This document shows, one piece after another, positions 4,143 through 57,291 of a stretch of 64,000 bases of DNA. The first letter of the stretch is position 1. Each line of letters starts with the position of its first letter. The stretch is taken from positions 248,001-312,000 of the IMG/VR virus record IMGVR_UViG_3300032242_000723; one strand, given 5' to 3'. The notes below the pieces were generated by a model, which saw nothing but the letters and a program-made list of their open reading frames with translations, was not told where the DNA came from and searched no databases. The translations under genes were made by a program, and so were the position numbers.

Positions 4143-4247
4143 ATGTTTAAATATATTAAGAAGATGATCAAGTATATCAAGAGAGAACTTATGTACAGAA
4201 AGCGTATGAAAGAATTAAAAAAGCGGGACCCGTTTATCTATAAGTAA
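4143..4247 (+). CDS. 34-aa basic micropeptide MFKYIKKMIKYIKRELMYRKRMKELKKRDPFIYK
   Basis: Read manually: AAGGAA RBS, ATG at 4143, TAA at 4245-4247. Fills the gap before the carbamoyltransferase gene. Confidence 0.7.
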   Translation: MFKYIKKMIKYIKRELMYRKRMKELKKRDPFIYK

Positions 4248-4251
4248 TATC

Positions 4252-5727
4252 ATGAACTATATTGGAATAAGCTGTGGCTTTCACGATGCGGGACTAAGTG
4301 TAGTAGACGATGAAGGTAGGATATTGTTTGCTGGTCACAGTGAGCGATATAGTATGCAAAAGCATGACAAAGACCTATGTGCCGATATTATTCAAGATGC
4401 TCTTGGCTACGTGACAGATGACTATGAGTTGCACTACTATGAGAGGCCATTGCTCAAAGCTGTACGACAGTTCCAAGCAGGACAAGCATTAGGACCCTTT
4501 AGTGCTAAGTCAGTTATCGGCAAAGATAACATGACCATGCTAAGTGATAAGCCGGTCAAGACGCATGGACATCACCTAAGTCACGCGGCTGCTGGATTCC
4601 AAACAAGTCCATACAGTGATGCAACTGTAGTTGTTATTGATGCCATTGGTGAGCTTGACACTATCACTATATATGACGCATCATATGATAAGAGTGGCAA
4701 AGCAGTCTATAAGAAACTATGGAGCCGCATGTATCCTGACTCGATTGGTCTTTTTTATTCTGCGATGACAGCTAGAGTTGGCTTACGTCCACTAGATGAA
4801 GAATATATTCTAATGGGTATGGCCGCGTATGGGAATGCTGACAAATGCATAGACGAAATGGAAGAATCTATTGACTACGAGATGCTAGATTTCTACTATA
4901 ACTTTCATACCGGTGTCGATAGCGAATTCCTAAAGGGGGCAGATGATATGGACATTGCCGCGGCGGCACAGTCTGTTGTTGAAAGGTTAATCAATATGGT
5001 CATGAGTAAAGCCAGACAATATGGCAAGAGTAAGAATCTTGTATATGGAGGCGGCGTTGCATTAAACTGTTTAGCGAATAGAAATCTCGGAGAATATTTT
5101 AAGAATATTTGGATCATGCCTAACCCAGGTGACGCAGGTAACAGTGTAGGTGCAGCAGCATTAGGCTATGGTCGCAAGTTACAGTGGAATAATGCGTTTC
5201 TAGGATACGACATCAAAGGTGATTATCCAGTTGACAATATCATCGATAAGTTACATAATGATAAGATAGTAGGAGTGGCAAGTGGTAGAGCCGAGTTTGG
5301 CCCTAGAGCCTTAGGCAATCGTTCATTACTAGCAGACCCACGAGGACCAGACATTAAGGATAAGGTAAATGCAATCAAACGAAGACAACAGTTCAGACCA
5401 TTCGCACCCGTCATACTTGAAGAGCATCTTACTCAGTACTTTGACATGCCTATTAATTGGGATAGTAGCCGTTATATGCAAGTCATTGCTACTTGTAGGT
5501 ATCCTGACTTATTTCCCGCTATCGTTCATGCTGATGGGACTAGTCGTGTTCAAACAGTTCCAAAAGATAAATCAGGAATCAGACGACTCTTAGAACGTTG
5601 GTATGACGAGACCGGCTGCCCTATGCTACTTAACACATCGTTGAATATACGCGGTGAGCCAATGGTAAATAACCGTTCCGATGCAGATCGGTTTGAAAAA
5701 CTTTATAACGTTACTGTGTGCTCATAA
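4252..5727 (+). CDS. Carbamoyltransferase (NodU/CmcH/TobZ family)
   Basis: GISCGFHDAG, HHLSHAAAGF, GGVALNC, GDAGNSVGAA, EFGPRALGNRSLLADP, FRPFAP, LLNTSLN motifs. Confidence 0.92.
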   Translation: MNYIGISCGFHDAGLSVVDDEGRILFAGHSERYSMQKHDKDLCADIIQDALGYVTDDYELHYYERPLLKAVRQFQAGQALGPFSAKSVIGKDNMTMLSDKPVKTHGHHLSHAAAGFQTSPYSDATVVVIDAIGELDTITIYDASYDKSGKAVYKKLWSRMYPDSIGLFYSAMTARVGLRPLDEEYILMGMAAYGNADKCIDEMEESIDYEMLDFYYNFHTGVDSEFLKGADDMDIAAAAQSVVERLINMVMSKARQYGKSKNLVYGGGVALNCLANRNLGEYFKNIWIMPNPGDAGNSVGAAALGYGRKLQWNNAFLGYDIKGDYPVDNIIDKLHNDKIVGVASGRAEFGPRALGNRSLLADPRGPDIKDKVNAIKRRQQFRPFAPVILEEHLTQYFDMPINWDSSRYMQVIATCRYPDLFPAIVHADGTSRVQTVPKDKSGIRRLLERWYDETGCPMLLNTSLNIRGEPMVNNRSDADRFEKLYNVTVCS

Positions 5728-5734
5728 GTAGTAG

Positions 5735-8700
5735 ATGCTGAGAGATGTCTTTTATTACGGCGATAAGCCAAATGTACACCCACGAGAACAATACGCAGAA
5801 TCATTTGATGATGCTAGACAGAAGTCTACTACAGAACATTTTTGGATCATTAATGAGTTCTGCGATTATCGTGGATTTGATTGGGACTGGGACTTTGAGT
5901 TCCTTCCTGACGAAGACGTATGGGCAGAACAACATACTAACATATGGCCTAGCCAGCATCAAAAAGATAGTGGCACTTGGCTGTGTTCAAGTGAAGAATA
6001 CGATTTAAACCTATTTATATATCGTAATGATGTTACCCCGATTAAGCGTAAAAATATCAAGACATCTAACTGGGTTGAATTTGACCTAATTGATCAGACG
6101 AAGTTCGACTTCTCATGGCATCCGGACCCAACTGATCCTCCTTATATCTATAAATGGGGCAGCAAGTTTGCTCCGGCACAACTTAAGACATGCTTAGAAT
6201 ATCATGTTGAAGGTGCAACTAGAATAAAGTACATGACTAGTATCGTTGAACTATTACCGGATACAGATCGCTGGATCGAACATCAGGCTATCGACAAAAC
6301 TAAGTTTGATATGTCATGGCGTCCAGACCCAATGGATCCCCCTTTTATCTATATTTGGGGTAATAAGTATATAGAAGGTACATTAAGACCTACACTAGAA
6401 TATCGTGTACCCGATGCAATACATACGAAGTATATGCCTGATTTAATCTCAGTACTCCCTGAATATGATAGATGGGTAGAAGTACAGGCGGTAGATAAGA
6501 GCAAGTTTGACTTTAGTTGGCGACCAGATCCAAGAGAACCGGCATATATCTATACATGGGGTAATAAGTATATTGATGCTGAGTTTATACCTACGCTAGA
6601 ATATCATTGCGAAGGCGCAACAGAACGCAAGTATATGACAAATGATGTTGTTGTACTTCCTCAATATGATAGATGGGTAGAAGTACAGGCGGTAGATAAG
6701 AGCAAGTTTGACTTTAGTTGGCGACCAGATCCAAGAGAACCGGCATATATTTATGTTTGGGGTAATAAGTATATAGAAGGTACATTAATACCTACATTAG
6801 AGTATCATTGTCCCGATGCGACTAAAGTAAAGTATATGACAAACGATGTTGTTGTACTTCCTCAATGGGACAAATGGCAAATTCCTGACAATCTTGACAA
6901 GGCATCATTTGACTTTAGTTGGAGACCTGATCCACGTGAACCTGATTTTATTTACGAGTTTGCAACTCAATGGCAGAAGACAGGTGGACCGCGTTATATT
7001 GTAGAGAACGCAAAACAAAGAAAGTTTATAAATGATATACGAGCTACTATTTTGCCCACACACGCAAATTGGACTATTCCAGACAATATTGACATTAACA
7101 GTTTTGACTTTAGTTGGCATCCTGACGATACCGATCCTGCTTATATCTATGTATTTGGTACTCAATGGGCAACAAGTGGCGGACCAATTTACACTGTTGA
7201 CAATGCTACTAAAACAAAATATGTAGGAGTTCAGGTAGCGTCTGCTGTTGCATCTAAAACTAATTGGAAGTATAATTCAACTGTTGTAGATGAGAGTCAG
7301 TTTGATTTCTCGTGGCATCCAGATCCAAGAGAACCTGCATATATCTATGTATGGGGTAACAAATATGAAGACGGTAAATATAAATCTACAATAGAATATC
7401 ATGCCGAAGGTGCTACTGATGTCAAGTATATGACAAATGATGTCGCTTTGCTTCCTGATTGGGATAGATGGGTATTTCTTAAAGAGGTAGATAAGAACAA
7501 GTTTGACTTTAGTTGGCGACCAGACCCATTAGAACCCGCCTATATCTATACCTGGGGTAACAAGTATGAACCTGCTGAAATATCTCCGACGTTAGAATAT
7601 CATTGTCCTAACGCTACTGATGTAAAGTATATGGGCGATACAGCTCCTGTACTCCCTGAATGGGATAGATGGCAAATTCCTGATAACGTAGATAAATCTA
7701 AGTTCGACTTTACCTGGAGACCGGACCCAAGAGAGCCGCCCTTTATGTATGCGTTTGCTACTGTATGGAATGATAGGGGCGGCCCCATCTATGTTGCACC
7801 TACTTCAACTAAATTCAAATACATTGAAGATGTTAAAGCAGTATTGTTGTCGAGTACTGATAATTGGGAAATTTCTGAAGGAATAAATGTTTCTGACTTT
7901 GACTTCTCGTGGGTTCCGCACCCTCAGGCACCACCTTATATCTATCAGTTTGGTACATTAGGAGATCCTGACGACGGTCCAAGATATGTTTCTCCTGGTA
8001 ATAACGGCGAAATCGTTAAACTTAGAAGAGTAACAAAGAAGTTTGAAAAAGAACAGGTTGTCGCACAGTACTACATCGAAACAACGTTAGCTGATCTAGC
8101 CAGCAAATACCCTAGAAAATTATTTTGGGCTAAACAAAAAAATATTGATTATTCAACGTTCGACTTCACATGGCGACCTACGATTGAACAGGCAGAATAT
8201 GTACATGTATTTGGTTCGTCTGATTCAGATGCCACCCATACATATTTAGTTAACGGTATGCAATGGGCCAAAGGCAATCGTGAATTAAACTGGGTCAAAG
8301 ATGATAAGCTTGATGACAAGACACTGTTCAACATATTCAAGAAGTCTGATATGTTCTATGTTGACAAAGGTAATTTAGAAGCACAAGTAAGATTTGAAAA
8401 GCTTAGACTATTACACCCGCAGATACAAAAGACACGCTATCTAAACTCGTGGGTCGATACTATAAAGCGTTGTAATAATCGTGCAACGAGTGAATTGATA
8501 TGGGTACTCAACTCTGAGCTTGACTATACTGACTTTGACTTTGAATACTATCCTAATCCTTGGCAGATGAAGATGGTACATGTATTTGGTACACAGTGGT
8601 CACATTGGGGAACAACTTTCATGGTTAACAGAGAAACATTTGCCGAAGACACAAAGTATATTAATATCATTGAGCATCTATCTAACATTAACTTTGTAAA

Positions 8701-10077: not shown

Positions 10078-10106
10078 TTGACATATGTTTCCCGTTTCGC
10101 TATATT
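10078..10106 (+). promoter_or_regulatory. Sigma70-type early promoter
   Basis: TTGACA-17 bp-TATATT; ATG 5 nt downstream. Confidence 0.8.
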
Positions 10107-10111
10107 AAATC

Positions 10112-10360
10112 ATGGACAAACAAACGGAGATTGATAACATGAACTGTATCAACTGTAACAAGCCCGATGACGGCACCCTCACTAAGCCCTACGAAAAGGG
10201 TATCGATGTTGAGTCATATTTGGCAAGTCAAGGCCTAAACTTTTTTGTCTGCGAACAATGTTTAGATCACAACGAGTCTCAGCTTAAGCAGCTAGGATTT
10301 ACCGAAGAGTTGGAATTCTCGCAATATATGCGAGATAAATCAGCCAAGAGCTGGCGTTAG
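10112..10360 (+). CDS. Small protein with CxxC...CxxC putative Zn finger
   Basis: CINC and CEQC motifs. Confidence 0.6.
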   Translation: MDKQTEIDNMNCINCNKPDDGTLTKPYEKGIDVESYLASQGLNFFVCEQCLDHNESQLKQLGFTEELEFSQYMRDKSAKSWR

Positions 10361-13437: not shown

Positions 13438-13460
13438 ATACCTCATTGATAAATACTCGT

Positions 13461-16400
13461 ATGAATCTCAATGAACTCCATTCTTTCAAACTTGCAGATG
13501 CTATCAAGTTTCATACGGAACTTAATCCAAAACTTTGGAAAAATGACCAGTTAGATCCATTAGTTAGAAAGCAGTTATTGATTATTGCTGAGGACTTTGT
13601 TGAGGAGTTAGGAATACCTGATTTGGATATAGTTGATGTAACTATCTCAGGTTCTAACGCCGCATTTACCTGGACTAAACATAGCGATTTAGACCTTCAT
13701 ATCCTCGTAAATATGAGCGAGTTGCACCAAGACGCAATCTACCGCGAACTATTCAGAGCAAAGAAGACATTATATAATAGTAATCACGATATCACGGTGC
13801 ACGGCATCCCAGTTGAACTTTATGTTCAAGATTCAGCCGAACCTGTTGTATCGTTAGGTGAGTACAGTATCCTACATGATAAGTGGATCAAGGTCCCTGT
13901 TCGTAGAGCGGCCAAGTTAGATCAAAATGCTGCCAAAGCAAAGTTTGACCAACTTAAAGATTTGATTAGTGTTGCACTTAAGACTAAGCATAGCAAAAAG
14001 ATCAGTAAAGCCCTAGCATTAATCAAACGTTATCGCCAAGCTGGTCTTGACAAGGGCGGCGAGTTCAGTCCTGAGAACCTTGCCTTTAAGGCTGTTAGAT
14101 CGCAAGGTGCGATTGATGCACTATATGCAATGCGTGATAAGTTACACAGTGCAGAGTTAACGATTGAAGAAGGCTACGCTGGAGCCAAGATGAAGTTCTT
14201 GAAGCCAGGTGAATTGCGTGGATCGTACACGCCTGCTAAACTTACCGCATTAGGATTCAAGAAGTCACAGAACGGCTCATGGTTCATTCTACAATCTAAG
14301 TGGGAAGAGTTGCGTAAGACTGGTCAACTATATGAGACCGATGTTGTTGCAGAAAATCTCAGAAAAGAGTTTGAAGACTTTGATCCTGAAAACTTAGCTG
14401 AAGCACTTGACTCTACACCATATCCTTATGAAGAGATTTCGTCCACTCACCATAACTATATTGCTAGTAGAAGCCAATACATATTCACTACTGAAGATAA
14501 TCTGCCTTATGTAGCTATGATATTCAAATATCCAGGCAATAGAATCCGTATTGAGTTTAAGTCCACAAAGCAAACTCGTGATTTTCTTGGGTTCGAGGTG
14601 ACAGGTACAGGTGATGCCCGTAAGGTATTCGCTACTGTGATTGACATTGTGAAGAAGTATGTAGATAAGCATCATCCTGTTGAAATATCATTCTCAGCCA
14701 AAGAACCAAGCAGAGTCCGTTTATACGATGCGTTCTTGAAAAGACTGGATAGAGAGTTACCTGATTATGAAGGCAAATCGGGTCCAGGATACGAACCAGA
14801 TAATACATATTACCATCTCACTTTAAAAAATCAAAAGATAGACGAATCACTTGACTCACAACCATATCCTTATATTTCAACTATCGGCACAACAGGTGCA
14901 CATGAATATGCGTTCACTACGGATGACGATAACGAATATGAAGCCATAATCATTAATCAAAAATTTGGGATCCATGTATCTTTTTTTCTAAAACAAAAAC
15001 AACATAAAAATGGCCTAATCATAACCCGCACAGGTATAACGGGTACCGGCGATGCTCGTAGAGTGTTCGCTACTGTTATTGATATCGTGAAGAAATTCGC
15101 AGCAGCAGAGAAGCCTGAAGCCATAGTGTTTACTGCAAGTGAACCTAGCAGGATCCGTTTGTATGACGCATTCGTTAAAAGATTAGACAGAGAATTACCT
15201 GAGTATGCTGAGACTCGTAAAGAAAAAGGCATGGCAGAATGGTTCGTACTTCTACGCAAAACTAAGAAGATAGACGAAGCAACCGACCGTGACAGTGCGA
15301 TTAAGCAGATATTGAAGTTACAGAACACACAAGGTCGTTCACCAAGTGAGATAGAGGCATCAAAAGCTATCATCGCTAAAATGATGAAACGCTATAACAT
15401 TCATTCAAAAGAGTTGCTACCAGTTGAACGTAATCCATACCAAGATCGTATCAAACAAGCACGAGCCGAGCGTGATGTAGCAGGCGATATGCTAAAGGCA
15501 GAGTGGGATAGATTCAAAGGTGGGATCAAGGATAAGGTGTCTACTATCTTTAAAGAAGACTTAGACGAAGCACTTGATTCCCAACCATATCCATACGAGA
15601 TTGAAGAAGATAGCATAGCCTGGCAGATCAGCACCTTCACGACAAGTGACCGAAACCGTTATAAGGTTTGGGTAGTGAAATACAGTAATAAAGAAGTTTC
15701 GGTTGAATTCTCCTATCAAGGTAACGATGACATTGACACGAACTCAATGGAAATTGAAAACATAGGTGATGCCCGTAAGGTATTCGCTACTGTGATTGAG
15801 ATTGTAAAGAACTACGCTAAGAAGTATAAACCTAATAAGATTTCTTTTGACGCTGATCCAACTGAACCAAGCAGGATTCGTTTTTATAGTGCTCTTGTCA
15901 AGAGAGCAGACCGAATGTTGCCGGACTACGAAGATCAATCAATTGACTTCCTAGGTGACTTCAACCTTGTTAGAAAAGGTTATCAGTTTAACGAATCAAT
16001 AGTCTATCATGTGACCCCTACTAAAAATGTAAAGTCTATTATGCGTGACGGATTACGACCTCAAGTCGGCAACCGTTCGAGTAAGATTACAGGTGAAGAT
16101 AATGGTATCTTTGTCTTCAATAGCAAAAACGATGCAGAAGATGCTATAATGAACTGGCTCGGTGATGAGTTCGGTGAAGATGCTGAGTTAACCTTATTAG
16201 CAATCGATGCTGAAGGATTAGAACAGCATATGTCTACGGGTGCAGGATACGAAACAATCATGGATGTAGGGATCGAGCCTAGTCGTATTCGAGTAACTCA
16301 GGATATTCTTGAAGCATCTGGTTACATTCCAAGCAAGAAGGAAGCGAACGATCCTCGCTTCTCAACTGCGTTAACGGTAGATGTGAAACCTGATTCAATA

Positions 16401-16481
16401 CAAAAGAACGCTAAGGCATTTGGTTCAAAAACTTCACGAGCAGGTATTCCACCTCAAGCACGGACTGACGGCAAGATTTAA
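13461..16481 (+). CDS. 1006-aa polyvalent polyprotein: nucleotidyltransferase + 3 copies of an unknown domain + DUF2786-like + ADP-ribosyltransferase-like
   Basis: Start ATG 13461, 5 nt after TAAATA. SGSNA..SDLDLH Pol-beta NTase motif; three E(A/S)LDSxPYPY...GDARKVFATVI...EPSRIRLY units; KQILKLQ..SPSEIEASKAIIAKMMKRYNI; YHVT..NVKSIMRDGL.P. Confidence 0.8.
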   Translation: MNLNELHSFKLADAIKFHTELNPKLWKNDQLDPLVRKQLLIIAEDFVEELGIPDLDIVDVTISGSNAAFTWTKHSDLDLHILVNMSELHQDAIYRELFRAKKTLYNSNHDITVHGIPVELYVQDSAEPVVSLGEYSILHDKWIKVPVRRAAKLDQNAAKAKFDQLKDLISVALKTKHSKKISKALALIKRYRQAGLDKGGEFSPENLAFKAVRSQGAIDALYAMRDKLHSAELTIEEGYAGAKMKFLKPGELRGSYTPAKLTALGFKKSQNGSWFILQSKWEELRKTGQLYETDVVAENLRKEFEDFDPENLAEALDSTPYPYEEISSTHHNYIASRSQYIFTTEDNLPYVAMIFKYPGNRIRIEFKSTKQTRDFLGFEVTGTGDARKVFATVIDIVKKYVDKHHPVEISFSAKEPSRVRLYDAFLKRLDRELPDYEGKSGPGYEPDNTYYHLTLKNQKIDESLDSQPYPYISTIGTTGAHEYAFTTDDDNEYEAIIINQKFGIHVSFFLKQKQHKNGLIITRTGITGTGDARRVFATVIDIVKKFAAAEKPEAIVFTASEPSRIRLYDAFVKRLDRELPEYAETRKEKGMAEWFVLLRKTKKIDEATDRDSAIKQILKLQNTQGRSPSEIEASKAIIAKMMKRYNIHSKELLPVERNPYQDRIKQARAERDVAGDMLKAEWDRFKGGIKDKVSTIFKEDLDEALDSQPYPYEIEEDSIAWQISTFTTSDRNRYKVWVVKYSNKEVSVEFSYQGNDDIDTNSMEIENIGDARKVFATVIEIVKNYAKKYKPNKISFDADPTEPSRIRFYSALVKRADRMLPDYEDQSIDFLGDFNLVRKGYQFNESIVYHVTPTKNVKSIMRDGLRPQVGNRSSKITGEDNGIFVFNSKNDAEDAIMNWLGDEFGEDAELTLLAIDAEGLEQHMSTGAGYETIMDVGIEPSRIRVTQDILEASGYIPSKKEANDPRFSTALTVDVKPDSIQKNAKAFGSKTSRAGIPPQARTDGKI

Positions 16482-16517
16482 GTTGACACCCGACTCATAT
16501 TCATATACAGTATGAAC

Positions 16518-16778
16518 ATGAGTGACCGATTTAATACCGCAGAAGACGCCCGCAAATATGTGGATAACTTCCGTTATACCAATATTGACATCACTTTTAC
16601 ACAAGATACAACTCGGATCCTCAATAACGTTATCAAGTTGGTTACTGAACTCAGCCAGCTTGAGGTCGAGGCACGGCAGTCACGCAAAAATCGTAAGGTT
16701 GATGAGTGTAAGATACGGCTTGATCAAGCCATTGACAGACTAGAAAAGTTGATGATTATCGCTAAACTCATGAGTTAA
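16518..16778 (+). CDS. Hypothetical helical/coiled-coil protein
   Basis: Downstream of TTGACA(16483)-17 bp-TACAGT; alternative start at 16512. Confidence 0.65.
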   Translation: MSDRFNTAEDARKYVDNFRYTNIDITFTQDTTRILNNVIKLVTELSQLEVEARQSRKNRKVDECKIRLDQAIDRLEKLMIIAKLMS

Positions 16779-27932: not shown

Positions 27933-27962
27933 TCACAAGCCTGTTGCTATATAAATATTATC

Positions 27963-28658
27963 ATGAGCAACATTGACATCAACCAAACACTAGACCTAAT
28001 CAAACTCAAGTTCTACAACGAATATCTGTACACCGCCCACCTGTACGATGAAGGCGACAGTCCATTTCATAAAGAACTAACAGCACAAGTCGTAAAGACT
28101 TATGTAGACCCACTCAATCTTCCAAAAGATGCACATATTCTTGATCTTGGATGCGGCCCTGGCTACTTCTTAGACGAGATGAAGGAACGCGAGTACACTA
28201 ACACTGTTGGTGTCACACTCAGTCCAGGTGATATCAAGATTTGTGAAGACAAGGGACATGTGATCAAGAAGTATGATCTATCATTTCTTCCACAGAAGGA
28301 TGGCTACTACGATGAGTCAGTAGACTTTATCTTCTTGCGTCATGCACTTGAGCATAGTCCGTATCCTATCTTCTCATTGATGGAATATAATCGTATCCTC
28401 AAGCAGGGATCAAAGATTTACATTGAAGTTCCAGCCCCAGACTGTGAACGACAACATGAATCTAACCTGAATCACTATTCTATCTTAGGTTCTAATCAGT
28501 TGGGAGCACTATTACAACGCTGTGGATTCAACATTGATGCGTTTAACAACTTAGAGTTTGATCTTCATATTCCAACCGAAGATGGTGAAACTAAGAAGGT
28601 TACTGAAAAGTATTATTGCATAGTTGCCACGAAGGCTAAACCACTAGATGTAAAGTAA
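27963..28658 (+). CDS. Class I SAM-dependent methyltransferase
   Basis: ILDLGCGPG, VDFIFLRHALEH, RILKQG. Confidence 0.9.
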   Translation: MSNIDINQTLDLIKLKFYNEYLYTAHLYDEGDSPFHKELTAQVVKTYVDPLNLPKDAHILDLGCGPGYFLDEMKEREYTNTVGVTLSPGDIKICEDKGHVIKKYDLSFLPQKDGYYDESVDFIFLRHALEHSPYPIFSLMEYNRILKQGSKIYIEVPAPDCERQHESNLNHYSILGSNQLGALLQRCGFNIDAFNNLEFDLHIPTEDGETKKVTEKYYCIVATKAKPLDVK

Positions 28659-31665: not shown

Positions 31666-31935
31666 ATGACAGACAATGCTGGTATCAATCTTGTTGTAAA
31701 GGGAAGTTGTAATCCCTTCGGTGGTTGCGGCGGCGGATGTTGCAAAGTTAGAGTGTACGAACCTGGAAATGTAAACTATCATTTAGAATGGTGCGAGTAT
31801 TTTGATGAACCTACTCGTAAATGTAAAATATACGAAACTAGACCCGAGGGGTGCAGAACATACCCAACTGTAAGGCACATCCAACACGATATATGGTTAA
31901 TACCAGGTTGTGGATATTACCTTGAAGAAGAATAA
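31666..31935 (+). CDS. YkgJ-like Cys-cluster (Zn/Fe-S chelating) protein
   Basis: C-x5-C-x3-CC ... C..F......C.IY..RP..CR.YP; ATG at 31666. Confidence 0.75.
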   Translation: MTDNAGINLVVKGSCNPFGGCGGGCCKVRVYEPGNVNYHLEWCEYFDEPTRKCKIYETRPEGCRTYPTVRHIQHDIWLIPGCGYYLEEE

Positions 31936-31943
31936 ATACTATC

Positions 31944-33491
31944 ATGAGTAACGCACCTTCACTAATCAAAGACCCATATAAGAAAACAGTATTTAAAAAT
32001 CAACAAGAACTAGACGATTTCGTTAAATGTTGTGACCCGGCAACAGGTTATCTATATTTCATGGATAACTTCTTTATGATTCAACACCCTACTCGTGGCA
32101 GTATGAACTATCACCCCTGGGCATTCCAAGAACGATTGATTGAAACATATCACAAATATCGTTTTTCTATCTCACTGATGCCAAGACAGTCTGGTAAATC
32201 AACAAGTGCAGCCGGATACTTGCTTTGGTATGCAATGTTCAATCCGGACTCAACGATATTAATCGCAGCACACAAATATACAGGTGCTCAGGAAATCATG
32301 CAGCGTATTCGTTATGCGTATGAAAACTGCCCAGATCATATCAAGGCTGGTGTCACAACCTATAACAAGGGTTCTATTGACTTTGAAAACGGTTCGCGTA
32401 TCGTATCTGCTACAACGACTGAGAACACTGGTCGTGGTATGTCAATCACCTTATTATATCTTGACGAGTTCGCATTCGTTAGACCTTCAATCGCTAAAGA
32501 GTTCTGGACAGCAATCACTCCTACTCTGTCAACAGGAGGTAAAGCCATTATCACATCAACACCAAACTCAGATGAAGATCAGTTCGCACTCATATGGAAA
32601 GGTGCTAACAAGACAGAAGACGAGTTCGGCAATACTACTGATATAGGCGTAAACGGATTTAGAGCATATAGAGCATACTGGAGAGAACAGCCGGGCCGCG
32701 ACGACAAATGGGCTGCTGAACTCCGTGCTCAACTCGGGGATGATCGCTTTCGCAGAGAGATGGATTGCGATTTTATCATCGCAGACGAGACGCTTATCAA
32801 TCCAAACACGTTACTACTGTTAGACGGCATCGAACCTGTTTCTCGTATGGGACAAATACGCTGGTACCAACAACCTGTCAAGGGAAATATATACGCAGTT
32901 GGTCTTGATCCTTCATTAGGTACAGGTGGCGATCCATCTGCGATACAGATATATGAAGCAAATACAACCACACAGATTGGTGAATGGAAGCATAATAAGA
33001 CTGACATTCCTAGCCAGATCAAGTTGATTGCTGAAGTTTGTAGGCACATAGAATCCATCACGAAAGAACCAAACAACATCTATTACTCTATTGAGAGCAA
33101 TGGTATCGGTGAAGCGGCTATCATATCATTAAACGAGTTCGGTGAATCAAACATCCCAGGAACCTTCTTGAGTGAGAGCGGCAAAAAGCGTAAGGGCTTT
33201 AACACAACAAACAAGGTCAAGATCGCCGCGTGTGCTAAGTTCAAAACATTGCTAGAATCAAAGAAAATGACAGTCAATAGCCGTCCATTGATCAGCGAAC
33301 TTAAAGCATTTGTCGCATCTGGTGGCAGTTATGCAGCCAAAATCGGTGACACGGATGATTTGGTAATGGCCTCACTATTAGCGGTTAGAATGATGACTCA
33401 ACTCGCAGAGTATCATGGTGACTTAGAATCTCAAATCAGAGATCATAGTGAGTTCATTGAGCCATTACCCTTCTTTGCGGTACTCGGATAA
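31944..33491 (+). CDS. terL: Terminase large subunit (T4 gp17-like)
   Basis: PRQSGKST Walker A, LLYLDEFAFV Walker B, ITSTPN, GLDPSLGTGGD and DDLVMA nuclease motifs. Confidence 0.95.
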   Translation: MSNAPSLIKDPYKKTVFKNQQELDDFVKCCDPATGYLYFMDNFFMIQHPTRGSMNYHPWAFQERLIETYHKYRFSISLMPRQSGKSTSAAGYLLWYAMFNPDSTILIAAHKYTGAQEIMQRIRYAYENCPDHIKAGVTTYNKGSIDFENGSRIVSATTTENTGRGMSITLLYLDEFAFVRPSIAKEFWTAITPTLSTGGKAIITSTPNSDEDQFALIWKGANKTEDEFGNTTDIGVNGFRAYRAYWREQPGRDDKWAAELRAQLGDDRFRREMDCDFIIADETLINPNTLLLLDGIEPVSRMGQIRWYQQPVKGNIYAVGLDPSLGTGGDPSAIQIYEANTTTQIGEWKHNKTDIPSQIKLIAEVCRHIESITKEPNNIYYSIESNGIGEAAIISLNEFGESNIPGTFLSESGKKRKGFNTTNKVKIAACAKFKTLLESKKMTVNSRPLISELKAFVASGGSYAAKIGDTDDLVMASLLAVRMMTQLAEYHGDLESQIRDHSEFIEPLPFFAVLG

Positions 33492-33530
33492 GATTGCACA
33501 GACTATTTCACATTTAGTATAAATAGTATC

Positions 33531-35522
33531 ATGGCACTAGAAAACAAATCATTCAATGTAAAACTTTATAAACTTTTGAAATCTAAAGGTTATGAACCAG
33601 TTCCTTTGGACTCAAAGAACAAAAGAGTTCAAGCATCACAAGAAGCTGATGTTATTGAGTTCACTTTCAAAAAAGAAGGTGAAGATTATGGCAAAGCTTG
33701 GGTAAGTATCGACGATGCTCAACGGGTCATAGTATATTACGACGATGAGCAAGAAAACAGTCCAAGCGAAGTAACTCCAGGTGTTGATTACGATGATACT
33801 TGGACAGGTTTCTTGACCCACTTAAAGAACTGGTCAATGCGTAAGCAACTTGATTTTGAATTAGCCAACAAAGACCGCTTAGGCGATGACATGAGACAAC
33901 GGGATTATCATAAGATGAAAGAAAAAGTATCAGAAGGCTATCACGCTATGGGCAGAGCAAAAAGTTATAATGACAATGTACCAGATGTAAAGATCGTCCT
34001 TCAACATAGCCGTAATATCGAAGAAGGTGAACAACGCTATCGTAACGTAGCGAAAATCTATCTTGAAAACTCAGACGGCGAGCGTATCCTTGCACCTACT
34101 AACAAGCCAGGCGTAGCACAGATTTATGCACGTCACTTAGCAGAAGGTGGACAACCTCATGATGAACGTTGGAATCACTTGAAGGGTCTTTGCGAAGAAT
34201 ATAACAAGATGGCTGGATTTGTCCGTGCTACCCGCAATGGTGAGTTCACTGAGTCCGCACAAAAACTCGTACAAGAAGGTATCAATCACTATAATAAGTT
34301 ACGTGAATCACTTAGCAAGATGCGTGGTTCGCGTGGCTACAACGCATACTTTGAATCATGGTCACCTCCTCTCATGGAAGATGAGAGTGATGACACGATC
34401 AATGAACTATTCGTCCAGGAAACAATGGATCCTCGTATCGAGTCGGTTATGCCAATCCTCTCACGCCTTCGCAAGAATGTAGTAGAGATGAATGAAGTTG
34501 GTATGCTTGAAAGCTGGGCTGACAATGTTATCAATGAGAAGCTGGAACTTGGCGAATATAACGATCATGAAATGGCTGACACAAAAACTGACATGAGAAA
34601 AACAGGTGATGAAGTCACATCAGAGCATGACGAAGCCTATGCAAAGTTAAAGAGAATGGCACCCGAACTCTATAACTTCATTCGTAACGAAGCTCCGATG
34701 CCGATTGATCCGATCCAAACATTACAATATCTTCGCCAATCAGGTGGAAATGCAGGACAACTATTACGTATGCTTAAGGATCACATCAAGCAAGATACCG
34801 AAAAGCAATACGACAAAAAGCATCCATCCTTAGCAGAAAGCATGAAGCGTTTCTTAGAGACACTCGTGAATGAAGGACTCAAAGATACAGGTTGGATGGA
34901 CAAGGACGAAGCCGAGGACGGCACGGTTCCTGCATTCATGCGTAAGAAGCAATATGACGACAAGATGAAGGACGCTACGGGCGGCCCTGCAGTTCGTACT
35001 GCAAAGAACAAGCCTGAAGACGAAATTGACGAAAACTTCATCAGCATGGACGCACAAGCCGTAGCAGAAGAAGATGATGCAGGTCAACTCAAAGGTGGCC
35101 CAATCGAAGCCTATGGTGTACATGGCGTGAAGTCTAAGCAATGGCGCAAGACATTTAAAAGTCAAGCTGCGTTTGAAAAATGGTTAGACAAAAATGAAGG
35201 CAACGTTGAAGTTTATGGCACTCGTGACCTAGATGAAAGCCTAGACGAATCTAGTTATCCTTGGTTAGATCATAATGATCGTCCTGCAAACAAAAGAGAC
35301 AAATCGCGTGATTCAGAAGAAGCATTGCGTAAAGAAGTCTCGCGTAAACAGGAAAAGAAGGTTGAAGAAGATTTAGATGCTAACCAAAAGCGTGTAGGTC
35401 AACTTGGTCCTACAGAAAAGGTCAAGAACAATAACATCGGTAAACTAGTAGGTGCCAACGAAAGCACTGAGTATGATGAAGAATTGGCAAGAATAATGGA
35501 TATTGCCCGTTTTAAAAGATAA
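33531..35522 (+). CDS. 663-aa modular head-associated protein
   Basis: Late, leaderless start. Acidic C-terminal half is broken by VNEG, IDEN, LDES-LDES, VEED and ANES sites. Confidence 0.55.
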   Translation: MALENKSFNVKLYKLLKSKGYEPVPLDSKNKRVQASQEADVIEFTFKKEGEDYGKAWVSIDDAQRVIVYYDDEQENSPSEVTPGVDYDDTWTGFLTHLKNWSMRKQLDFELANKDRLGDDMRQRDYHKMKEKVSEGYHAMGRAKSYNDNVPDVKIVLQHSRNIEEGEQRYRNVAKIYLENSDGERILAPTNKPGVAQIYARHLAEGGQPHDERWNHLKGLCEEYNKMAGFVRATRNGEFTESAQKLVQEGINHYNKLRESLSKMRGSRGYNAYFESWSPPLMEDESDDTINELFVQETMDPRIESVMPILSRLRKNVVEMNEVGMLESWADNVINEKLELGEYNDHEMADTKTDMRKTGDEVTSEHDEAYAKLKRMAPELYNFIRNEAPMPIDPIQTLQYLRQSGGNAGQLLRMLKDHIKQDTEKQYDKKHPSLAESMKRFLETLVNEGLKDTGWMDKDEAEDGTVPAFMRKKQYDDKMKDATGGPAVRTAKNKPEDEIDENFISMDAQAVAEEDDAGQLKGGPIEAYGVHGVKSKQWRKTFKSQAAFEKWLDKNEGNVEVYGTRDLDESLDESSYPWLDHNDRPANKRDKSRDSEEALRKEVSRKQEKKVEEDLDANQKRVGQLGPTEKVKNNNIGKLVGANESTEYDEELARIMDIARFKR

Positions 35523-43840: not shown

Positions 43841-43863
43841 GGGGGCTTCGGCCCCCTTTTTTT
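43841..43863 (+). terminator. Rho-independent terminator with UUCG loop
   Basis: GGGGGC-TTCG-GCCCCC-T7. Confidence 0.92.
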
Positions 43864-43908
43864 ACCAATATATTTGTATTAAAATATTGATGCTGCTATA
43901 GTACTAAG

Positions 43909-44940
43909 ATGAACAATAAAGAACATCTCCTTTACTTCTTTTTGCAAGGGACAATAAACCTTAGTCAATATGATTATAAGTTTATGTCTAACCTGCAAAC
44001 AATGATAAGCAATGATAGCAGAGTGACCTCTAACCAGGCAACATTGTTTGATAACCTTATCAGCAAATATCAAAAGCAGTTAGCTAAGGCTGGGTACGAT
44101 AAGCAAACGCTTAAGACATTACCTTGGAAAGCAACCATAGTCGAAAGCACGGCTGAACATACTAGTGCCAGAGTGTCATTGTTTGATAACGAACTTAAGA
44201 TCAGGGTACCGTTCAACAAATCCTTCATTGCTCATTTCAGAGAGAATGTAGTTGACAATCCTTTTACCTGGGACAAAGAGTCTAAGTACTATCGCGCCTA
44301 TTTTACGACAAACGCACTGAAGATCGCATCAAAGTCACTTCCTAAATATTTCCCCACAGTAACCTATCATGATGACCTCGTTGATATCGTGAATGAGTTA
44401 AAGAAATATGAGGCACCTGTATGGGATCCAATGTTGATCGACAACAACGGTCACTTAATGATCGCCGCTACAAATCCTATCGTGGATAATATCGTAAAGG
44501 ATATAAATCTTCAGTTAAATATGAAGACATTGCATACATTATCACGACATGGAATCAAAACTGATAATAAGATCACTGATACTGATCTTAAACTTAAGTT
44601 CGCAGCCGAGTATGTAACCGAAGTAGATTTGGACAACATGGAACAAGTGGCAGAATGGGTGAAGGAACTCGAATGTGATGGTGTGATATTAGGTAGAGGC
44701 ATCATATATGGTAAACCTTACGGACTAGGTGAGACGGCTACGATGAAAGAGATTATTACTACTAATCTAGCCAAACATGATGTGCCCTGTATTGCATCGC
44801 ACTCATCACAAGAAGGCGCGACTGTGGACCGTAACTATCTTTTAATGCAACTTACTAGCATGACAACTACGCCAGCATTTCCCAGCAATACTTCTAAGAT
44901 AATCATAGTGAAAAACTCCCGTCCCATAGAGGTCAAATGA
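43909..44940 (+). CDS. Hypothetical protein
   Basis: 343-aa ORF coupled to the helicase gene. Confidence 0.7.
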   Translation: MNNKEHLLYFFLQGTINLSQYDYKFMSNLQTMISNDSRVTSNQATLFDNLISKYQKQLAKAGYDKQTLKTLPWKATIVESTAEHTSARVSLFDNELKIRVPFNKSFIAHFRENVVDNPFTWDKESKYYRAYFTTNALKIASKSLPKYFPTVTYHDDLVDIVNELKKYEAPVWDPMLIDNNGHLMIAATNPIVDNIVKDINLQLNMKTLHTLSRHGIKTDNKITDTDLKLKFAAEYVTEVDLDNMEQVAEWVKELECDGVILGRGIIYGKPYGLGETATMKEIITTNLAKHDVPCIASHSSQEGATVDRNYLLMQLTSMTTTPAFPSNTSKIIIVKNSRPIEVK

Positions 44941-46385: not shown

Positions 46386-46424
46386 TATGTTGACATCAAA
46401 TACTATCTGTGCTATATTAGCAAC

Positions 46425-46928
46425 ATGAGAATACTTACATTAGACGAAAACGAGGCATTCAACCTCGAATACTTGCCAGAAGAAATTGATGATCTAAGAT
46501 TTGCGGTACTAGATAACTCAACACCTACTAATGTAGACTATCTGTATATCCCGTTAATCTTCCTAGAATCATTCAATGCTCCTGCACTCGTGCTCAAGAT
46601 CGGCAACAAAACGATCAAGATGCCAGTTGATTGGCAGATACTAATCGGTGAACAAGAACATGGTGATTTAGAAACTCTTCAGTTGTCCAGCTTGAATGAC
46701 AGGGGATTCAATGCGTTTCAGTTCAATCCATTGACATCTAAGGCACCGACATTCTTACCCATTGAGATATTAGATATCTATCCAGATGTGACATGGTATG
46801 CACCTAAGTTGCGTAATGGACAGTTCTTATGTGTACCAATAGACGATGGTCCCGAACCGCGTTGCGTATACTTTGTTAAAGAGATCAGCAGGAACTGCGA
46901 GATCGTAGATTATGGACAGGCGTTTTGA
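46425..46928 (+). CDS. Conserved hypothetical phage protein
   Basis: ATG 6 nt after TTGACA(46390)-17 bp-TATATT. Confidence 0.7.
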   Translation: MRILTLDENEAFNLEYLPEEIDDLRFAVLDNSTPTNVDYLYIPLIFLESFNAPALVLKIGNKTIKMPVDWQILIGEQEHGDLETLQLSSLNDRGFNAFQFNPLTSKAPTFLPIEILDIYPDVTWYAPKLRNGQFLCVPIDDGPEPRCVYFVKEISRNCEIVDYGQAF

Positions 46929-52559: not shown

Positions 52560-52606
52560 GTTACCAGAATACTTGATTAAACAACAGGATATGCTATACT
52601 GATATC

Positions 52607-53581
52607 ATGTTTGATATCCTAAATGTAATAACAGGAAAGAAAAAGCGTACACAAGGCGGCTGGTATAGCTTCAACGCACCTTGTTGTCATAATCGCGGAC
52701 ATAAAGTTGACAAGAGAATGCGTGGCGGTATCAAGCATGACGGTGACAACAACTGGTCGTACAACTGTTTCAACTGTAACTTCAAGTGCGGATTTGTATT
52801 AGGCAAGCAACTTAGTGCGAACACTAAGCAGTTGCTACGCTGGATGGGCGTAGAAGACAGTCAGATCACTAAGTGGAACCTAGAAAGTCTACAGCAAAAA
52901 GATTTGATTGAATATGTGACATCTAAGAAACAACGATCACATATTAGATTTGAAGAAGTTACATTACCTGATGCTGAAATGCTTGACAGTAACAATATAA
53001 AGCACAAATACTTTACTGACTATGTGAATAGCAGAGGATTTAAGACAACTGATTATCCTTTCATGGTCACTCCTGATGATGAGGGGCGAAACGCAAATCG
53101 TATTATCATTCCCTATACATATAAGAACAAGATCGTAGGACACACAAGTCGTTATCTTGACAATCGTATCCCCAAGTTCATCAAAGAACAACAGCCAGGA
53201 TATGTGTTTGGTTATGATTTTCAGAAGCCAAACTGGGAAGTATGTATCGTAGTCGAAGGCATATTTGATGCACTATCGTTAGATGCTATTGCACTGACAC
53301 ACGATACGATCAGCGACGAACAGGCTATCTTGATACGCTCACTCAATAGACGAGTCATCGTTGTTCCTGATATGGATAAGACAGGCTTAACGATATGCGA
53401 ACGAGCATTAGAGTTGGGCTTTCAAGTATCGATCCCAGATTGGGGACCTGATGTAAAGGATGTCAACGATGCTGTAGTTAAATATGGCAAGTTGGCGACA
53501 TTACTAAGTATACTACAAAACGCAACGAACAGTAAGATTAAGATAGAGATGAATAGGAAACGCATTGCTAAAAGAGTATAA
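52607..53581 (+). CDS. DNA primase (DnaG/gp61-like)
   Basis: Zn motif PCCH...CFNC; TOPRIM VVEGIFDA, VPDMD, KDVND. Confidence 0.9.
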   Translation: MFDILNVITGKKKRTQGGWYSFNAPCCHNRGHKVDKRMRGGIKHDGDNNWSYNCFNCNFKCGFVLGKQLSANTKQLLRWMGVEDSQITKWNLESLQQKDLIEYVTSKKQRSHIRFEEVTLPDAEMLDSNNIKHKYFTDYVNSRGFKTTDYPFMVTPDDEGRNANRIIIPYTYKNKIVGHTSRYLDNRIPKFIKEQQPGYVFGYDFQKPNWEVCIVVEGIFDALSLDAIALTHDTISDEQAILIRSLNRRVIVVPDMDKTGLTICERALELGFQVSIPDWGPDVKDVNDAVVKYGKLATLLSILQNATNSKIKIEMNRKRIAKRV

Positions 53582-56775: not shown

Positions 56776-56796
56776 TCTTAGTTAGACATACTAACG

Positions 56797-56830
56797 AAAA
56801 CCCGAGAATTTAATTATTCTCGGGTTTTTT
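56797..56830. terminator. Bidirectional terminator
   Basis: AAAACCCGAGAAT/ATTCTCGGGTTTT followed by a T-run. Confidence 0.85.
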
Positions 56831-56847
56831 ATGTTCTAAATACTTGC

Positions 56848-57291
56848 ATGTCACACCGCATCTGCTGCTATACCTTATTCAATATCACTCATACTGGTGT
56901 GTTAAACAGGTCAAGGCCTAATGAAGATAATGTAAATGAATGGTTACGTAAACGCAATACACAATGTAACTTTGATACAGTACTACAAGCAATATCATTG
57001 CGGTCACAGCCCGAAGTTGTTAAGGTGCCGATAAGAATAGAAATGCAAGAAGCTGACTTTATAAAGTTTGGTTTTTTGTATAGTAAAGAAGACAAGATTA
57101 GTTACTATTGGAAGTTTGAGTTTGAAGTACAACATGCAAGTGTGTTTGAGAACGGAATCATTCCATTAGGAGCGTTATACAATGATTGCAACGGTATTCC
57201 AATGATACTATGCGAAGATCAACTTACTATGCTGTCCAACTTCTTAGATACATCATCTGAGTTAAAGAACATTCACTTTGAGGTAACATGA
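56848..57291 (+). CDS. Hypothetical late protein
   Basis: ATG 5 nt after TAAATA. Confidence 0.7.
   Translation: MSHRICCYTLFNITHTGVLNRSRPNEDNVNEWLRKRNTQCNFDTVLQAISLRSQPEVVKVPIRIEMQEADFIKFGFLYSKEDKISYYWKFEFEVQHASVFENGIIPLGALYNDCNGIPMILCEDQLTMLSNFLDTSSELKNIHFEVT

What the first reader, a model, noticed from the sequence alone, without database searches (positions are those of the whole stretch)
13450..13463. Systematic leaderless genes: ATG sits 4-6 nt after the promoter box
Seen: TAA(A/G)TA followed by exactly 5 nt and then ATG, with no SD, at 4252, 13461, 27963, 31944 (terminase), 33531 and 56848, and by 4 nt at 5735. Sigma70 -10 boxes lie 5-6 nt before ATG at 10112, 16518, 43909, 46425, 52607 (primase) and 58888. 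This spacing puts the ATG at about +1. Established: leaderless mRNAs are common in alphaproteobacteria and are initiated by 70S ribosomes. Inference: the phage uses leaderless initiation as a second translational tier, possibly resistant to host shut-off.
Basis: partly seen in the sequence, partly recalled or inferred. Interest (0 to 1): 0.65.

Follow-up and report, generated by a model that had tools for sequence, protein, structure and literature searches.

The report
Start codons fused to phage promoters
In this uncultured 333-kb freshwater jumbo phage and its many environmental relatives, about one gene in nine, including the terminase and several virion genes, has its ATG exactly where transcription should begin, so these mRNAs probably have no leader and no ribosome-binding site. 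This is a known mode of expression, but it has not been described for T4-type late promoters.

Summary
All 13 sites read as the finder wrote them.

- **Late box.** Across the 333-kb genome, TAAATA followed by 5 nt and a gene-opening ATG occurs 24 times, against 2.6 expected (P about 1e-15). No one-base variant of the box is enriched.
- **Sigma70-like promoters.** These show a second peak, with a gene-opening ATG 5-6 nt after the -10 box (9 against 0.8 expected).
- **Geometry.** The two spacings match the textbook positions: the T4 late box spans -13 to -6 and the sigma70 -10 box spans -12 to -7. Both place the A of ATG at +1.
- **Supporting features.** The genome encodes a gp55-like late sigma factor. 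Late-box genes are packaging, virion and lysis genes. Sigma70-box genes are replication and nucleotide-metabolism genes.
- **Conservation.** For the eight sites with enough relatives, dozens of environmental contigs (45-90% protein identity) keep the box and spacing while the spacer letters vary. PA5oct, Phosso, GAP32 and T4 show no comparable excess.
- **Doubtful sites.** Site 4252 is rejected: its "box" is the end of a conserved upstream small ORF. Site 10112 is ambiguous and 5735 is uncertain.

No RNA data exist, so the transcription start sites are inferred. An alphaproteobacterial host and resistance to host shut-off are unsupported. I file this as a new variant of a known kind.

The parts
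13448..13463 (+). Flagged site: late box GATAAATA (13448-13455), 5-nt spacer, ATG 13461. It lies in a 93-nt divergent intergenic region.
   Evidence: Two distinct relatives at 47-51% aa identity keep TAAATA + 4 nt + ATG. No SD.
13461..16481 (+). 1006-aa gene served by that box (DUF6934 repeats, phrog_36119).
   Evidence: Relatives align from residue 1.
27950..27965 (+). TATAAATA + 5 nt + ATG 27963 (231-aa methyltransferase-like gene).
   Evidence: Orthologues carry TAAATA or TAAGTA, either leaderless or with a ~25-nt leader containing AGGA.
31931..31946 (+). AATAAATA + 5 nt + ATG 31944 (terminase large subunit, 31944-33491).
   Evidence: In 30 distinct relatives the conservation peak is exactly TAAATA at -11 to -6 and the spacer varies.
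33518..33533 (+). TATAAATA + 5 nt + ATG 33531 (663-aa virion structural protein, 33531-35522).
   Evidence: Kept in most of 33 distinct relatives; a few distant ones have a 17-20-nt leader instead.
56796..56850 (+). Intrinsic terminator (stem 56796-56829), then TCTAAATA (56835-56842), 5 nt, ATG 56848 (147-aa gene).
   Evidence: Terminator. Box at 4-5 nt in 49 of 53 distinct relatives, each also preceded by a hairpin and T-run.
46390..46427 (+). Sigma70-type promoter: TTGACA (46390-46395), 17 nt, TG-n-TATATT (-10 at 46413-46418), 6 nt, ATG 46425 (167 aa, phrog_11279).
   Evidence: 56 of 58 distinct relatives keep the -10 box at 5-6 nt, 55 keep a -35 box and 52 keep the TG extension. The PHROG profile aligns from residue 1.
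43841..43911 (+). Terminator (43841-43856), weak -35 TTGTAT (43874-43879), TG-n-TATAGT (-10 at 43897-43902), 6 nt, ATG 43909 (343 aa).
   Evidence: 24 of 25 distinct relatives keep a -10 box at 5-6 nt.
52573..52609 (+). TTGATT, 16 nt, TG-n-TATACT (-10 at 52595-52600), 6 nt, ATG 52607 (Toprim primase-like, 324 aa).
   Evidence: 6 of 6 distinct relatives keep TG and the -10 box at 6 nt.
58853..58890 (+). TTGACA, 17 nt, TAACAT (58876-58881), 6 nt, ATG 58888 (exonuclease, 238 aa).
   Evidence: 38 of 57 distinct relatives have a -10 box at 5-8 nt, most at 6 nt.
16483..16520 (+). TTGACA, 17 nt, TACAGT (16506-16511), 6 nt, ATG 16518 (86 aa). Plausible, but no comparative data.
   Evidence: No relatives among the fetched loci.
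10078..10141 (+). Ambiguous site: early promoter, then ATG 10112 at 5 nt, then GGAG and an in-frame ATG at 10139.
   Evidence: This is the phage's repeated early promoter-leader cassette with ATA changed to ATG. The SD-led downstream start is at least as likely.
5723..5737 (+). Uncertain site: CATAAGTA + 4 nt + ATG 5735 (1444 aa). The TAA is the stop codon of the upstream gene.
   Evidence: TAAGTA + 5-6 nt + ATG is kept in 4 relatives, but TAAGTA is not enriched genome-wide. Stop-start coupling is an alternative.
4164..4254 (+). Rejected site: 27-aa ORF 4164-4247, whose last codons form the TAAGTA 'box' 5 nt before ATG 4252 (carbamoyltransferase).
   Evidence: Relatives keep the peptide end but not the box, and the ATG lies 0-5 nt from the stop or overlaps it.

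Best explanation
The window belongs to an uncultured T4-related jumbo phage. In roughly 40 of about 366 genes, the start codon sits at the transcription start point of the gene's own promoter.

There are two promoter classes. Early genes use host-type sigma70 promoters (TTGACA, 17 bp, often TG-n-TAnnnT) with 6 nt between the -10 box and the ATG. Late genes use a T4-type late box ((A/C)TAAATA, read by a phage gp55-like sigma factor, with no -35 box) with 5 nt between the box and the ATG. Under the standard geometry of each promoter type, both spacings put the A of ATG at +1.

RNA polymerase would therefore produce an mRNA that begins with AUG or within a base of it. That mRNA has no Shine-Dalgarno sequence and would be translated by the leaderless route, in which a ribosome binds the 5'-terminal AUG. 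Downstream genes in the same units, and most other genes, use ordinary SD-led initiation.

Shown here: the motifs, the spacings, their statistics, their conservation, the sigma factor gene and the gene classes. Inferred: the actual 5' ends and the mode of ribosome binding.
For: 1. **Enrichment and specificity.** 24 gene-opening ATGs lie 5 nt after TAAATA against 2.6 expected. No one-base variant of the box is enriched. ATG is enriched but GTG and TTG are not. Sigma70-like promoters show two modes, at 5-6 nt and at 26-39 nt.
2. **Geometry.** T4 late boxes span -13 to -6 (PMC2988020). Conservation profiles anchored on the ATG put TAAATA at -11 to -6. For the sigma70 class they put TTGAC at -35 to -31, TG at -15/-14 and TAnAAT at -12 to -7.
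3. **The boxes behave as promoters.** TAAATA is 6 times denser outside coding cores and is the most intergenic-biased of all A4T2 hexamers. A gp55-like sigma factor is encoded. Late-box genes are terminase, virion proteins, tail tube and endolysin. Sigma70-box genes are primase, exonuclease, dNMP kinase and a DNA-polymerase-like gene.
4. **No room for a leader.** Strong terminators lie within about 20 nt (stem end to ATG 56848) and 53 nt upstream of ATG 43909. Two divergent genes share a 40-nt intergenic region that holds only two back-to-back boxes.
5. **Conservation.** Box and spacing are kept in 30-58 distinct relatives per gene at 45-90% aa identity, with variable spacers and protein alignments starting at residue 1. 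SD-led control genes keep AGGAG instead.
6. **Predictions of leaderless biology are met.** No SD. A pyrimidine at -1 in 33 of 42 candidates against 59 of 121 SD-led genes (p 0.001). A less structured first 30 nt (MFE -0.75 against -1.71 kcal/mol, p 3e-4).
7. **Clade-wide excess.** The pattern exceeds its reversed control in five related environmental genomes (13-29 against 3-11) but shows no comparable excess in PA5oct, Phosso, GAP32 or T4.
Against: - No transcriptome or 5'-end data exist for this phage, so every TSS is inferred from consensus geometry.
- Spacings of 4 and 6 nt also occur. They require start-site flexibility or a 1-nt leader.
- Several late-box ATGs lie only a few nt after an upstream stop codon (31944, 5735). 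Read-through transcripts with coupled re-initiation could contribute there.
- A gp45 clamp homologue was not found with the T4 query, and gp33 was not tested. The late machinery may therefore differ from T4's.
- The host's ability to translate leaderless mRNA is unknown.
- The gene set and the SD calls come from a crude home-made gene finder.
Confidence: 0.8

Rival explanations
1. The ATGs are internal cistron starts on longer polycistronic mRNAs. TAAATA and the A/T-rich context would then serve translation (an SD-independent, S1-type or stop-start re-initiation signal) rather than transcription.
For: Some boxes overlap the stop codon of the upstream gene (31944, 5735). Site 4252 is explained this way. 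Many genes lie in tight same-strand arrays.
Against: - The enrichment is specific to the exact hexamer, not to AT-richness.
- The sigma70 class keeps a -35 box at 17 bp and a TG extension, which only RNA polymerase reads.
- The same box sits 20-60 nt upstream of SD-led late genes.
- Cases directly after terminators or in divergent 40-93-nt intergenic regions cannot be coupled.
- In relatives the terminase box is kept wherever the upstream stop codon lies.
Confidence: 0.08
2. The promoters are real, but the adjacent ATGs are not the start codons. Translation would begin at a downstream SD-led codon, so the mRNAs have ordinary leaders that happen to start with AUG.
For: This is probably true for 10112 and for genome position 145873. 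Both are copies of the standard early leader, with an in-frame GGAG- or GGA-led ATG 24-27 nt downstream.
Against: Most candidates have no SD-led alternative within 80 codons. Homologues align from residue 1 and the first residues are conserved. PHROG profiles match from position 1-4. The upstream in-frame stretch is short.
Confidence: 0.04
3. One reading: leaderless initiation is a dedicated second translational tier that lets phage messages escape a phage-imposed shut-off of SD-dependent host translation, in an alphaproteobacterial host.
For: Leaderless mRNAs would be immune to any attack on SD or anti-SD pairing. T4 RegB cuts GGAG in early messages (my own knowledge). Two of the nearest cultured relatives infect Sinorhizobium and Agrobacterium.
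Against: - About 263 of 366 phage genes still have an SD of 4 nt or more, including essential ones such as ssb-like and UvsX, so a general anti-SD shut-off would hurt the phage itself.
- Leaderless genes occur in both temporal classes.
- No RegB, MazF/PemK, IF3, bS21 or S1 homologue was found.
- No evidence points to an alphaproteobacterial host.
- Orthologues switch freely between leaderless and leadered forms, which suggests near-neutral interchange.
Confidence: 0.08

Closest known systems
[quoted passage not shown]
   Same: A -10 element lies a few bp before the start codon. There is no RBS, and the mRNA starts at or next to AUG. The TGnTA extended -10 box seen upstream of leaderless mRNAs in Bradyrhizobium is also prominent here (52 of 56 relatives of gene 46425).
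   Different: Here it is a virus feature covering about 11-12% of genes. It uses a strong -35 box plus a -10 box in the early class, and a second, phage-specific sigma class. The host is unknown.
Thermus phage phiYS40, with leaderless middle and late genes (Sevostyanova et al. 2007, cited through PMC4842269 ref. 64; details from my own knowledge)
   Same: A large lytic phage whose own promoters abut start codons, with extended -10 type promoters.
   Different: phiYS40 uses host sigma-A-type promoters in a host phylum where leaderless genes are the norm, and most of its middle and late genes are leaderless. Here a minority of genes is leaderless, and the late class uses a gp55-type box.
T4 late promoters (TATAAATA at -13 to -6; gp55, gp33, gp45; PMC2988020), and the predicted ATAAATA late motif of jumbo phages CBB and GAP32 (PMC5259590)
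   Same: The same core box, no -35 element, a gp55-like sigma gene present, and virion, lysis and packaging genes downstream.
   Different: In T4, GAP32, PA5oct and Phosso the box-N5-ATG pattern shows no comparable excess over its reversed control, and their late genes have SD-bearing leaders. Here the box is fused to the ATG. Positions -13/-12 are not conserved. No gp45 was found with the T4 query.
Lambda cI mRNA from PRM (my own knowledge)
   Same: The classic phage leaderless mRNA, starting with AUG and translated without an SD.
   Different: That is a single regulatory gene in a temperate phage. This is a genome-wide, clade-conserved arrangement covering structural and replication genes.

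Membership tests
Leaderless (promoter-adjacent start codon) genes | The primary transcript 5' end coincides with the start codon (0 to a few nt of 5' UTR). | not testable with these tools
   No RNA run holds this DNA. The phage is uncultured.
Leaderless (promoter-adjacent start codon) genes | The -10-type promoter element ends 5-7 nt before the start codon, more often than chance. | tested here: met
   24 against 2.6 (late box, 5 nt). 9 against 0.76 per spacing, about 1.5 for the two spacings (sigma70 box, 5-6 nt).. Anchored conservation profiles.
Leaderless (promoter-adjacent start codon) genes | No Shine-Dalgarno sequence before the start codon. | tested here: met
   40 of 42 candidates have no SD of 4 nt or more within 20 nt upstream. 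263 of 366 genes overall have one at some candidate start.
Leaderless (promoter-adjacent start codon) genes | An AUG start codon and a weakly structured 5' end. | tested here: met
   ATG is enriched and GTG/TTG are not. MFE of the first 30 nt is -0.75 against -1.71 (SD-led) and -2.53 (internal). Pyrimidine at -1 in 79% against 49%.
Leaderless (promoter-adjacent start codon) genes | The adjacent ATG is the true start codon. | tested here: met
   Homologues align from residue 1 with conserved N-termini for 13461, 31944, 33531, 43909, 46425, 52607, 56848 and 58888. Not met for 4252 as a leaderless site. Inconclusive for 10112.
T4-type (gp55-dependent) late promoter | A TATAAATA-like box about one helical turn upstream of +1, with no -35 element. 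| tested here: met
   (A/C)TAAATA at -12 to -6 relative to the ATG, with no conservation further upstream. The first two T4 positions are not conserved.
T4-type (gp55-dependent) late promoter | The phage encodes a gp55-family sigma factor. | tested here: met
   ORF at genome ~192.5 kb: T4 gp55 E 2e-5; phrog_12791 E 6e-72; phrog_234 E 9e-21.
T4-type (gp55-dependent) late promoter | gp45 sliding-clamp activator and gp33 co-activator. | tested here: inconclusive
   The T4 gp45 query found nothing, but no positive control was run. gp33 was not tested. CBB, a relative, is also reported to lack detectable gp33 and gp45 (PMC5259590).
T4-type (gp55-dependent) late promoter | Precedes late-function genes. 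| tested here: met
   Terminase, five virion structural proteins, tail tube and endolysin carry the box.
Sigma70-type early promoter | A TTGACA-like -35 box, 16-18 bp, a TAnnnT -10 box, optional TG extension. | tested here: met
   Nearest cultured relatives are split between Sinorhizobium/Agrobacterium and Pseudomonas at about 48-50% identity. MAG bins with related contigs are Bacteroidota, Actinobacteria, Methylophilaceae and others. Source runs are freshwater or aquatic metagenomes.

The most novel reading that the evidence does not exclude
A large, abundant clade of freshwater T4-related jumbo phages (at least 600 related stretches in IMG/VR) has fused its gp55-type late promoters and sigma70 early promoters directly to start codons. 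Key genes such as the terminase, virion proteins and a 6605-aa giant protein would then be expressed only as leaderless mRNAs. This would be the first case of leaderless expression driven by a T4-type late sigma factor. It implies either an unrecognised Gram-negative freshwater host lineage that translates leaderless mRNA very well, or a phage factor that promotes 70S initiation.
Probability: 0.3. Interest if true: 0.7.

Novelty: new variant of a known kind. Interest (0 to 1): 0.55.

Why it matters
- **Annotation.** Gene callers that expect an RBS will mis-start these genes. For example, the longest ORF at 13461 begins 63 nt too early.
- **Prediction without culture.** The exact match between the two spacings and the two promoter geometries is a sequence-only way to predict transcription start sites in uncultured phages.
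- **A new case for gp55-type promoters.** It shows that a T4-type late promoter can be used without any leader, which T4 and its cultured jumbo relatives do not show to any comparable extent.
- **A clue to the host.** The trait is clade-specific and interchanges with short SD-bearing leaders in orthologues. It therefore offers a natural series for studying how leaderless and SD-led initiation replace one another. It may also hint at the translation habits of the unknown host.

Tried and rejected
- **RNA evidence.** The run search found only DNA metagenomes, so I did not use read laying.
- **Cultured relatives.** Terminase starts in PA5oct, Phosso and GAP32 show no box-5-ATG. The pattern shows no comparable excess over its reversed control there or in T4. 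The trait is therefore not general to T4-like or jumbo phages.
- **TAAGTA as a second box.** It is not enriched genome-wide. Site 4252 is explained by upstream coding sequence. TAAGTA does swap with TAAATA at orthologous positions of gene 27963 and is kept before 5735 in relatives, so I leave it as a possible weak variant.
- **The spacing-3 peak of TAAATA-ATG.** It has 25 cases, but it is not leaderless. It comes from two repeated cassette sequences of homing-endonuclease-like paralogues.
- **Phage factors that might favour leaderless translation or attack SD pairing.** bS21, S1, RegB, PemK/MazF and IF3_C were not found. The RegB search had no positive control.
- **gp45.** The T4 query found nothing (no positive control).
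- **Host assignment from mis-binned MAG contigs.** The results are inconsistent.
- **Literature.** No paper in the held library contains both 'leaderless' and 'TATAAATA'. The phiYS40 paper itself is not held.
Full report
**What the window is.** The 64-kb window is bases 248,001-312,000 of a single 333,115-bp virus record with 41% G+C, estimated 92% complete. It encodes a T4-type terminase, a UvsX/RecA-like protein, a Toprim primase-like protein and many virion proteins. Its nearest cultured relatives are Sinorhizobium phage Phosso, Agrobacterium phage Atu_ph07 and the Pseudomonas PA5oct group, at only about 48-50% terminase identity, followed by the GAP32/CBB group. The DNA is found only in freshwater and aquatic metagenome runs, and none is on record as RNA.

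**Checking the observation.** Every one of the 13 sites reads as the finder wrote it. I then tested chance on the whole genome.
- TAAATA occurs 289 times on both strands. An ATG follows at spacing 5 in 31 cases and at spacing 3 in 25, against a background of about 6.
- The spacing-3 peak is unrelated. It comes from two repeated sequences of homing-endonuclease-like gene cassettes.
- Counting only ATGs that open an ORF of at least 50 aa, spacing 5 has 24 cases against 2.56 (Poisson 9e-16) and spacing 4 has 7 (P 0.016).
- None of the 18 one-base variants of the hexamer is enriched, TAAGTA included. GTG and TTG are not enriched either.
- For sigma70-like promoters (176 sites with at most 2 mismatches in total), gene-opening ATGs fall in two modes. 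One is at 5-6 nt after the -10 box (9 against 0.76 per spacing, about 1.5 for the two spacings, P 3e-5). The other is a broad mode at 26-39 nt. This second mode is the phage's standard early leader, which ends in GGAG and an ATG.
- With a crude gene set of 366 ORFs, 42 genes (11-12%) have a promoter-adjacent ATG: 29 with TAAATA, 3 with TAAGTA and 10 of sigma70 type. Forty of the 42 have no SD. By contrast, 263 genes have an SD of at least 4 nt at some candidate start.

**What the boxes are.**
- TAAATA is 6 times denser outside coding cores. It is the most intergenic-biased of all hexamers of the same composition, and it is twice as frequent on the gene's own strand near 5' ends.
- The genome encodes a gp55-family late sigma factor (T4 gp55 E 2e-5; phrog_12791 E 6e-72).
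- Relatives such as CBB and GAP32 were already predicted to use ATAAATA as a late promoter (PMC5259590).
- Genes behind a TAAATA-adjacent ATG are the terminase, five virion structural proteins (one of 6605 aa), a tail tube protein, an endolysin, a homing endonuclease and a few enzymes. Genes behind a sigma70-adjacent ATG are a primase-like protein, an exonuclease, a dNMP kinase and a DNA-polymerase-like protein.
- This split by function is what early and late promoters predict.

**Geometry.** The T4 late box occupies -13 to -6 (PMC2988020), leaving 5 nt before +1. A sigma70 -10 hexamer occupies -12 to -7 by the textbook convention, leaving 6 nt. The two classes here have modal spacings of 5 and 6 nt respectively. 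I anchored profiles on the ATG across distinct relatives. They place TAAATA at -11 to -6. For gene 46425 they place TTGAC at -35 to -31, TG at -15/-14 and TAnAAT at -12 to -7. The A of ATG therefore sits at +1 in both systems. Consistent with the usual preference for a pyrimidine at -1 and a purine at +1, the base before the ATG is C or T in 33 of 42 candidates, against 59 of 121 SD-led genes (p 0.001).

**Comparative evidence.** For the homologues of each gene I extracted the sequence upstream of the aligned first codon.
- *Terminase (31944).* 30 distinct upstream sequences at 73-90% aa identity have a consensus of TAAATA, 5 variable nt, then ATG. Nothing further upstream is conserved, and this holds wherever the upstream stop codon lies.
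- *Virion protein 33531.* The same arrangement holds in most of 33 distinct sequences. A few distant ones carry TAAATA plus a 17-20-nt leader instead.
- *Gene 56848.* 49 of 53 keep the box at 4-5 nt, always just after a hairpin and T-run whose stem letters covary.
- *Gene 13461 (the flagged site).* Both distinct relatives keep the box at 4 nt.
- *Sigma70 class.* Gene 46425 keeps the arrangement in 56 of 58 relatives, 43909 in 24 of 25, 52607 in 6 of 6 and 58888 in 38 of 57.
- *Controls.* SD-led genes (35685 and the TTG-started UvsX at 36977) keep AGGAG at the usual distance.
- *Whole genomes.* The pattern TAAATA-N5-ATG against its reversed control gives 31 v 6 in this genome. Five related environmental genomes give 29 v 11, 28 v 9, 23 v 7, 13 v 7 and 13 v 3. 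PA5oct gives 15 v 12, Phosso 3 v 2, GAP32 5 v 8 and T4 10 v 5.
- The trait thus belongs to this environmental clade, not to T4-like phages in general.
- Orthologues sometimes switch between the leaderless form and a short SD-bearing leader.

**No room for leaders.** ATG 56848 lies 19 nt after a 14-bp terminator stem, and ATG 43909 lies 53 nt after a GC-rich terminator. ATG 13461 lies in a 93-nt divergent region. Genome genes 68820(-) and 68861(+) are separated by 40 nt that hold only two back-to-back boxes, each 4 nt from its ATG. The first 30 nt of the candidate mRNAs are predicted to be less structured than those of SD-led genes (-0.75 against -1.71 kcal/mol, p 3e-4) and than internal segments of the same genes (-2.53, p 3e-7). 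This is a known requirement of leaderless translation (PMC8459731, seen in the list).

**Sites that fail.**
- *4252.* The TAAGTA is the codons tat-aag-taa that end a 27-aa ORF (4164-4247). Relatives conserve that ORF's C-terminus, but they have other stop contexts and no box. This start is stop-start coupled.
- *10112.* This is one of about 20 copies of the standard early promoter-leader, with ATA changed to ATG at +1. A GGAG-led in-frame ATG follows 27 nt later, and either or both may be used.
- *5735.* TAAGTA overlaps the upstream stop codon. It is kept in four relatives, yet TAAGTA is not enriched genome-wide. I leave it open.

**The interpretation beyond leaderlessness.** Nothing ties the phage to an alphaproteobacterial host. 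Most phage genes, including essential ones, keep SD sequences, and leaderless genes occur in both temporal classes. I found no homologue of RegB, PemK/MazF, IF3, bS21 or S1. A dedicated shut-off-resistant tier is therefore speculation. A simpler reading is that the first cistron of some transcription units has lost its leader in a lineage whose host translates such messages well enough.

**Comparison with what is known.** Promoter-adjacent start codons are well described in Deinococcus-Thermus (PMC12340547). They are also described in Bradyrhizobium, with a TGnTA extended -10 box that resembles leaderless phage promoters of phiYS40 (PMC4842269). From my own knowledge, lambda cI and many actinobacterial genes are further examples. 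The held library has no paper that combines 'leaderless' with the T4 late box. I therefore file this as a new variant of a known kind: leaderless expression from a gp55-type late promoter and from sigma70 promoters in parallel, conserved across a large uncultured jumbo-phage clade.

**Limits.** The transcription start sites are inferred. The gene set comes from a simple codon-bias ORF picker. The host is unknown. The protein database searches, structure prediction and read laying were not needed and were not used.

Noticed in passing
window 4164-4247 (+): A 27-aa small ORF with TAAATA 10 nt upstream. Its C-terminus (RDPFIYK) is conserved in relatives, just before the carbamoyltransferase gene. 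Probably a real small gene that long-ORF lists miss.
   Followed up: partly
window 12594-13367 (-) and 19362-20087 (-), plus about 10 further genome copies: Homing-endonuclease-like paralogues share a conserved 5' cassette. It consists of a late box, an ATG-TAG two-codon mini-ORF 3 nt later, a conserved ttcgcgag stretch, then AAGGAGC and an ATG about 45 nt downstream. This cassette causes the spacing-3 peak of TAAATA-ATG.
   Followed up: partly
genome-wide (e.g. window 10078-10141 and 42740-42810; genome 88985, 90441, 113317 ...): About 20 near-identical copies of a ~60-nt early promoter plus leader cassette: TTGACA, 17 nt, TATATT, then a C/A-rich leader ending in GGAG and ATG. They sit in front of unrelated genes.
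   Followed up: partly
genome G000:C1:68820 (-) / 68861 (+), and 126404 (-) / 126474 (+): Divergent gene pairs with only 40 and 69 nt between their ATGs. The first gap holds two back-to-back late boxes, each 4 nt from its ATG. The second pairs a sigma70-type promoter with a late-type promoter.
   Followed up: partly
genome G000:C1:206023-225840 (+): A single 6605-aa ORF (N-terminus matches phrog_10938, virion structural protein) preceded by GATAAGTA + 5 nt + ATG.
   Followed up: partly
window 6364-6780 (+), inside gene 5735-10069: Three copies of the same 15-nt string at a 201-nt period. This suggests 67-aa tandem repeats in the 1444-aa protein, which has no Pfam or PHROG match.
   Followed up: no
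window 13461-16481 (+): The 1006-aa protein carries three DUF6934 stretches plus phrog_36119 at its N-terminus. Function unknown.
   Followed up: no
loci L227-L232 (genome contigs): Contigs of this phage clade are binned into MAGs labelled Chitinophaga, Haliscomenobacter (a 183-kb contig), Aquiluna, Methylophilaceae, Gammaproteobacteria and even Methanobacteriota. These are probably binning artefacts and are useless as host calls.
   Followed up: no
window 36977 (+): The UvsX/RecA-like gene starts with TTG behind a conserved AGGAG in this phage and in most relatives. A few relatives use ATG.
   Followed up: no
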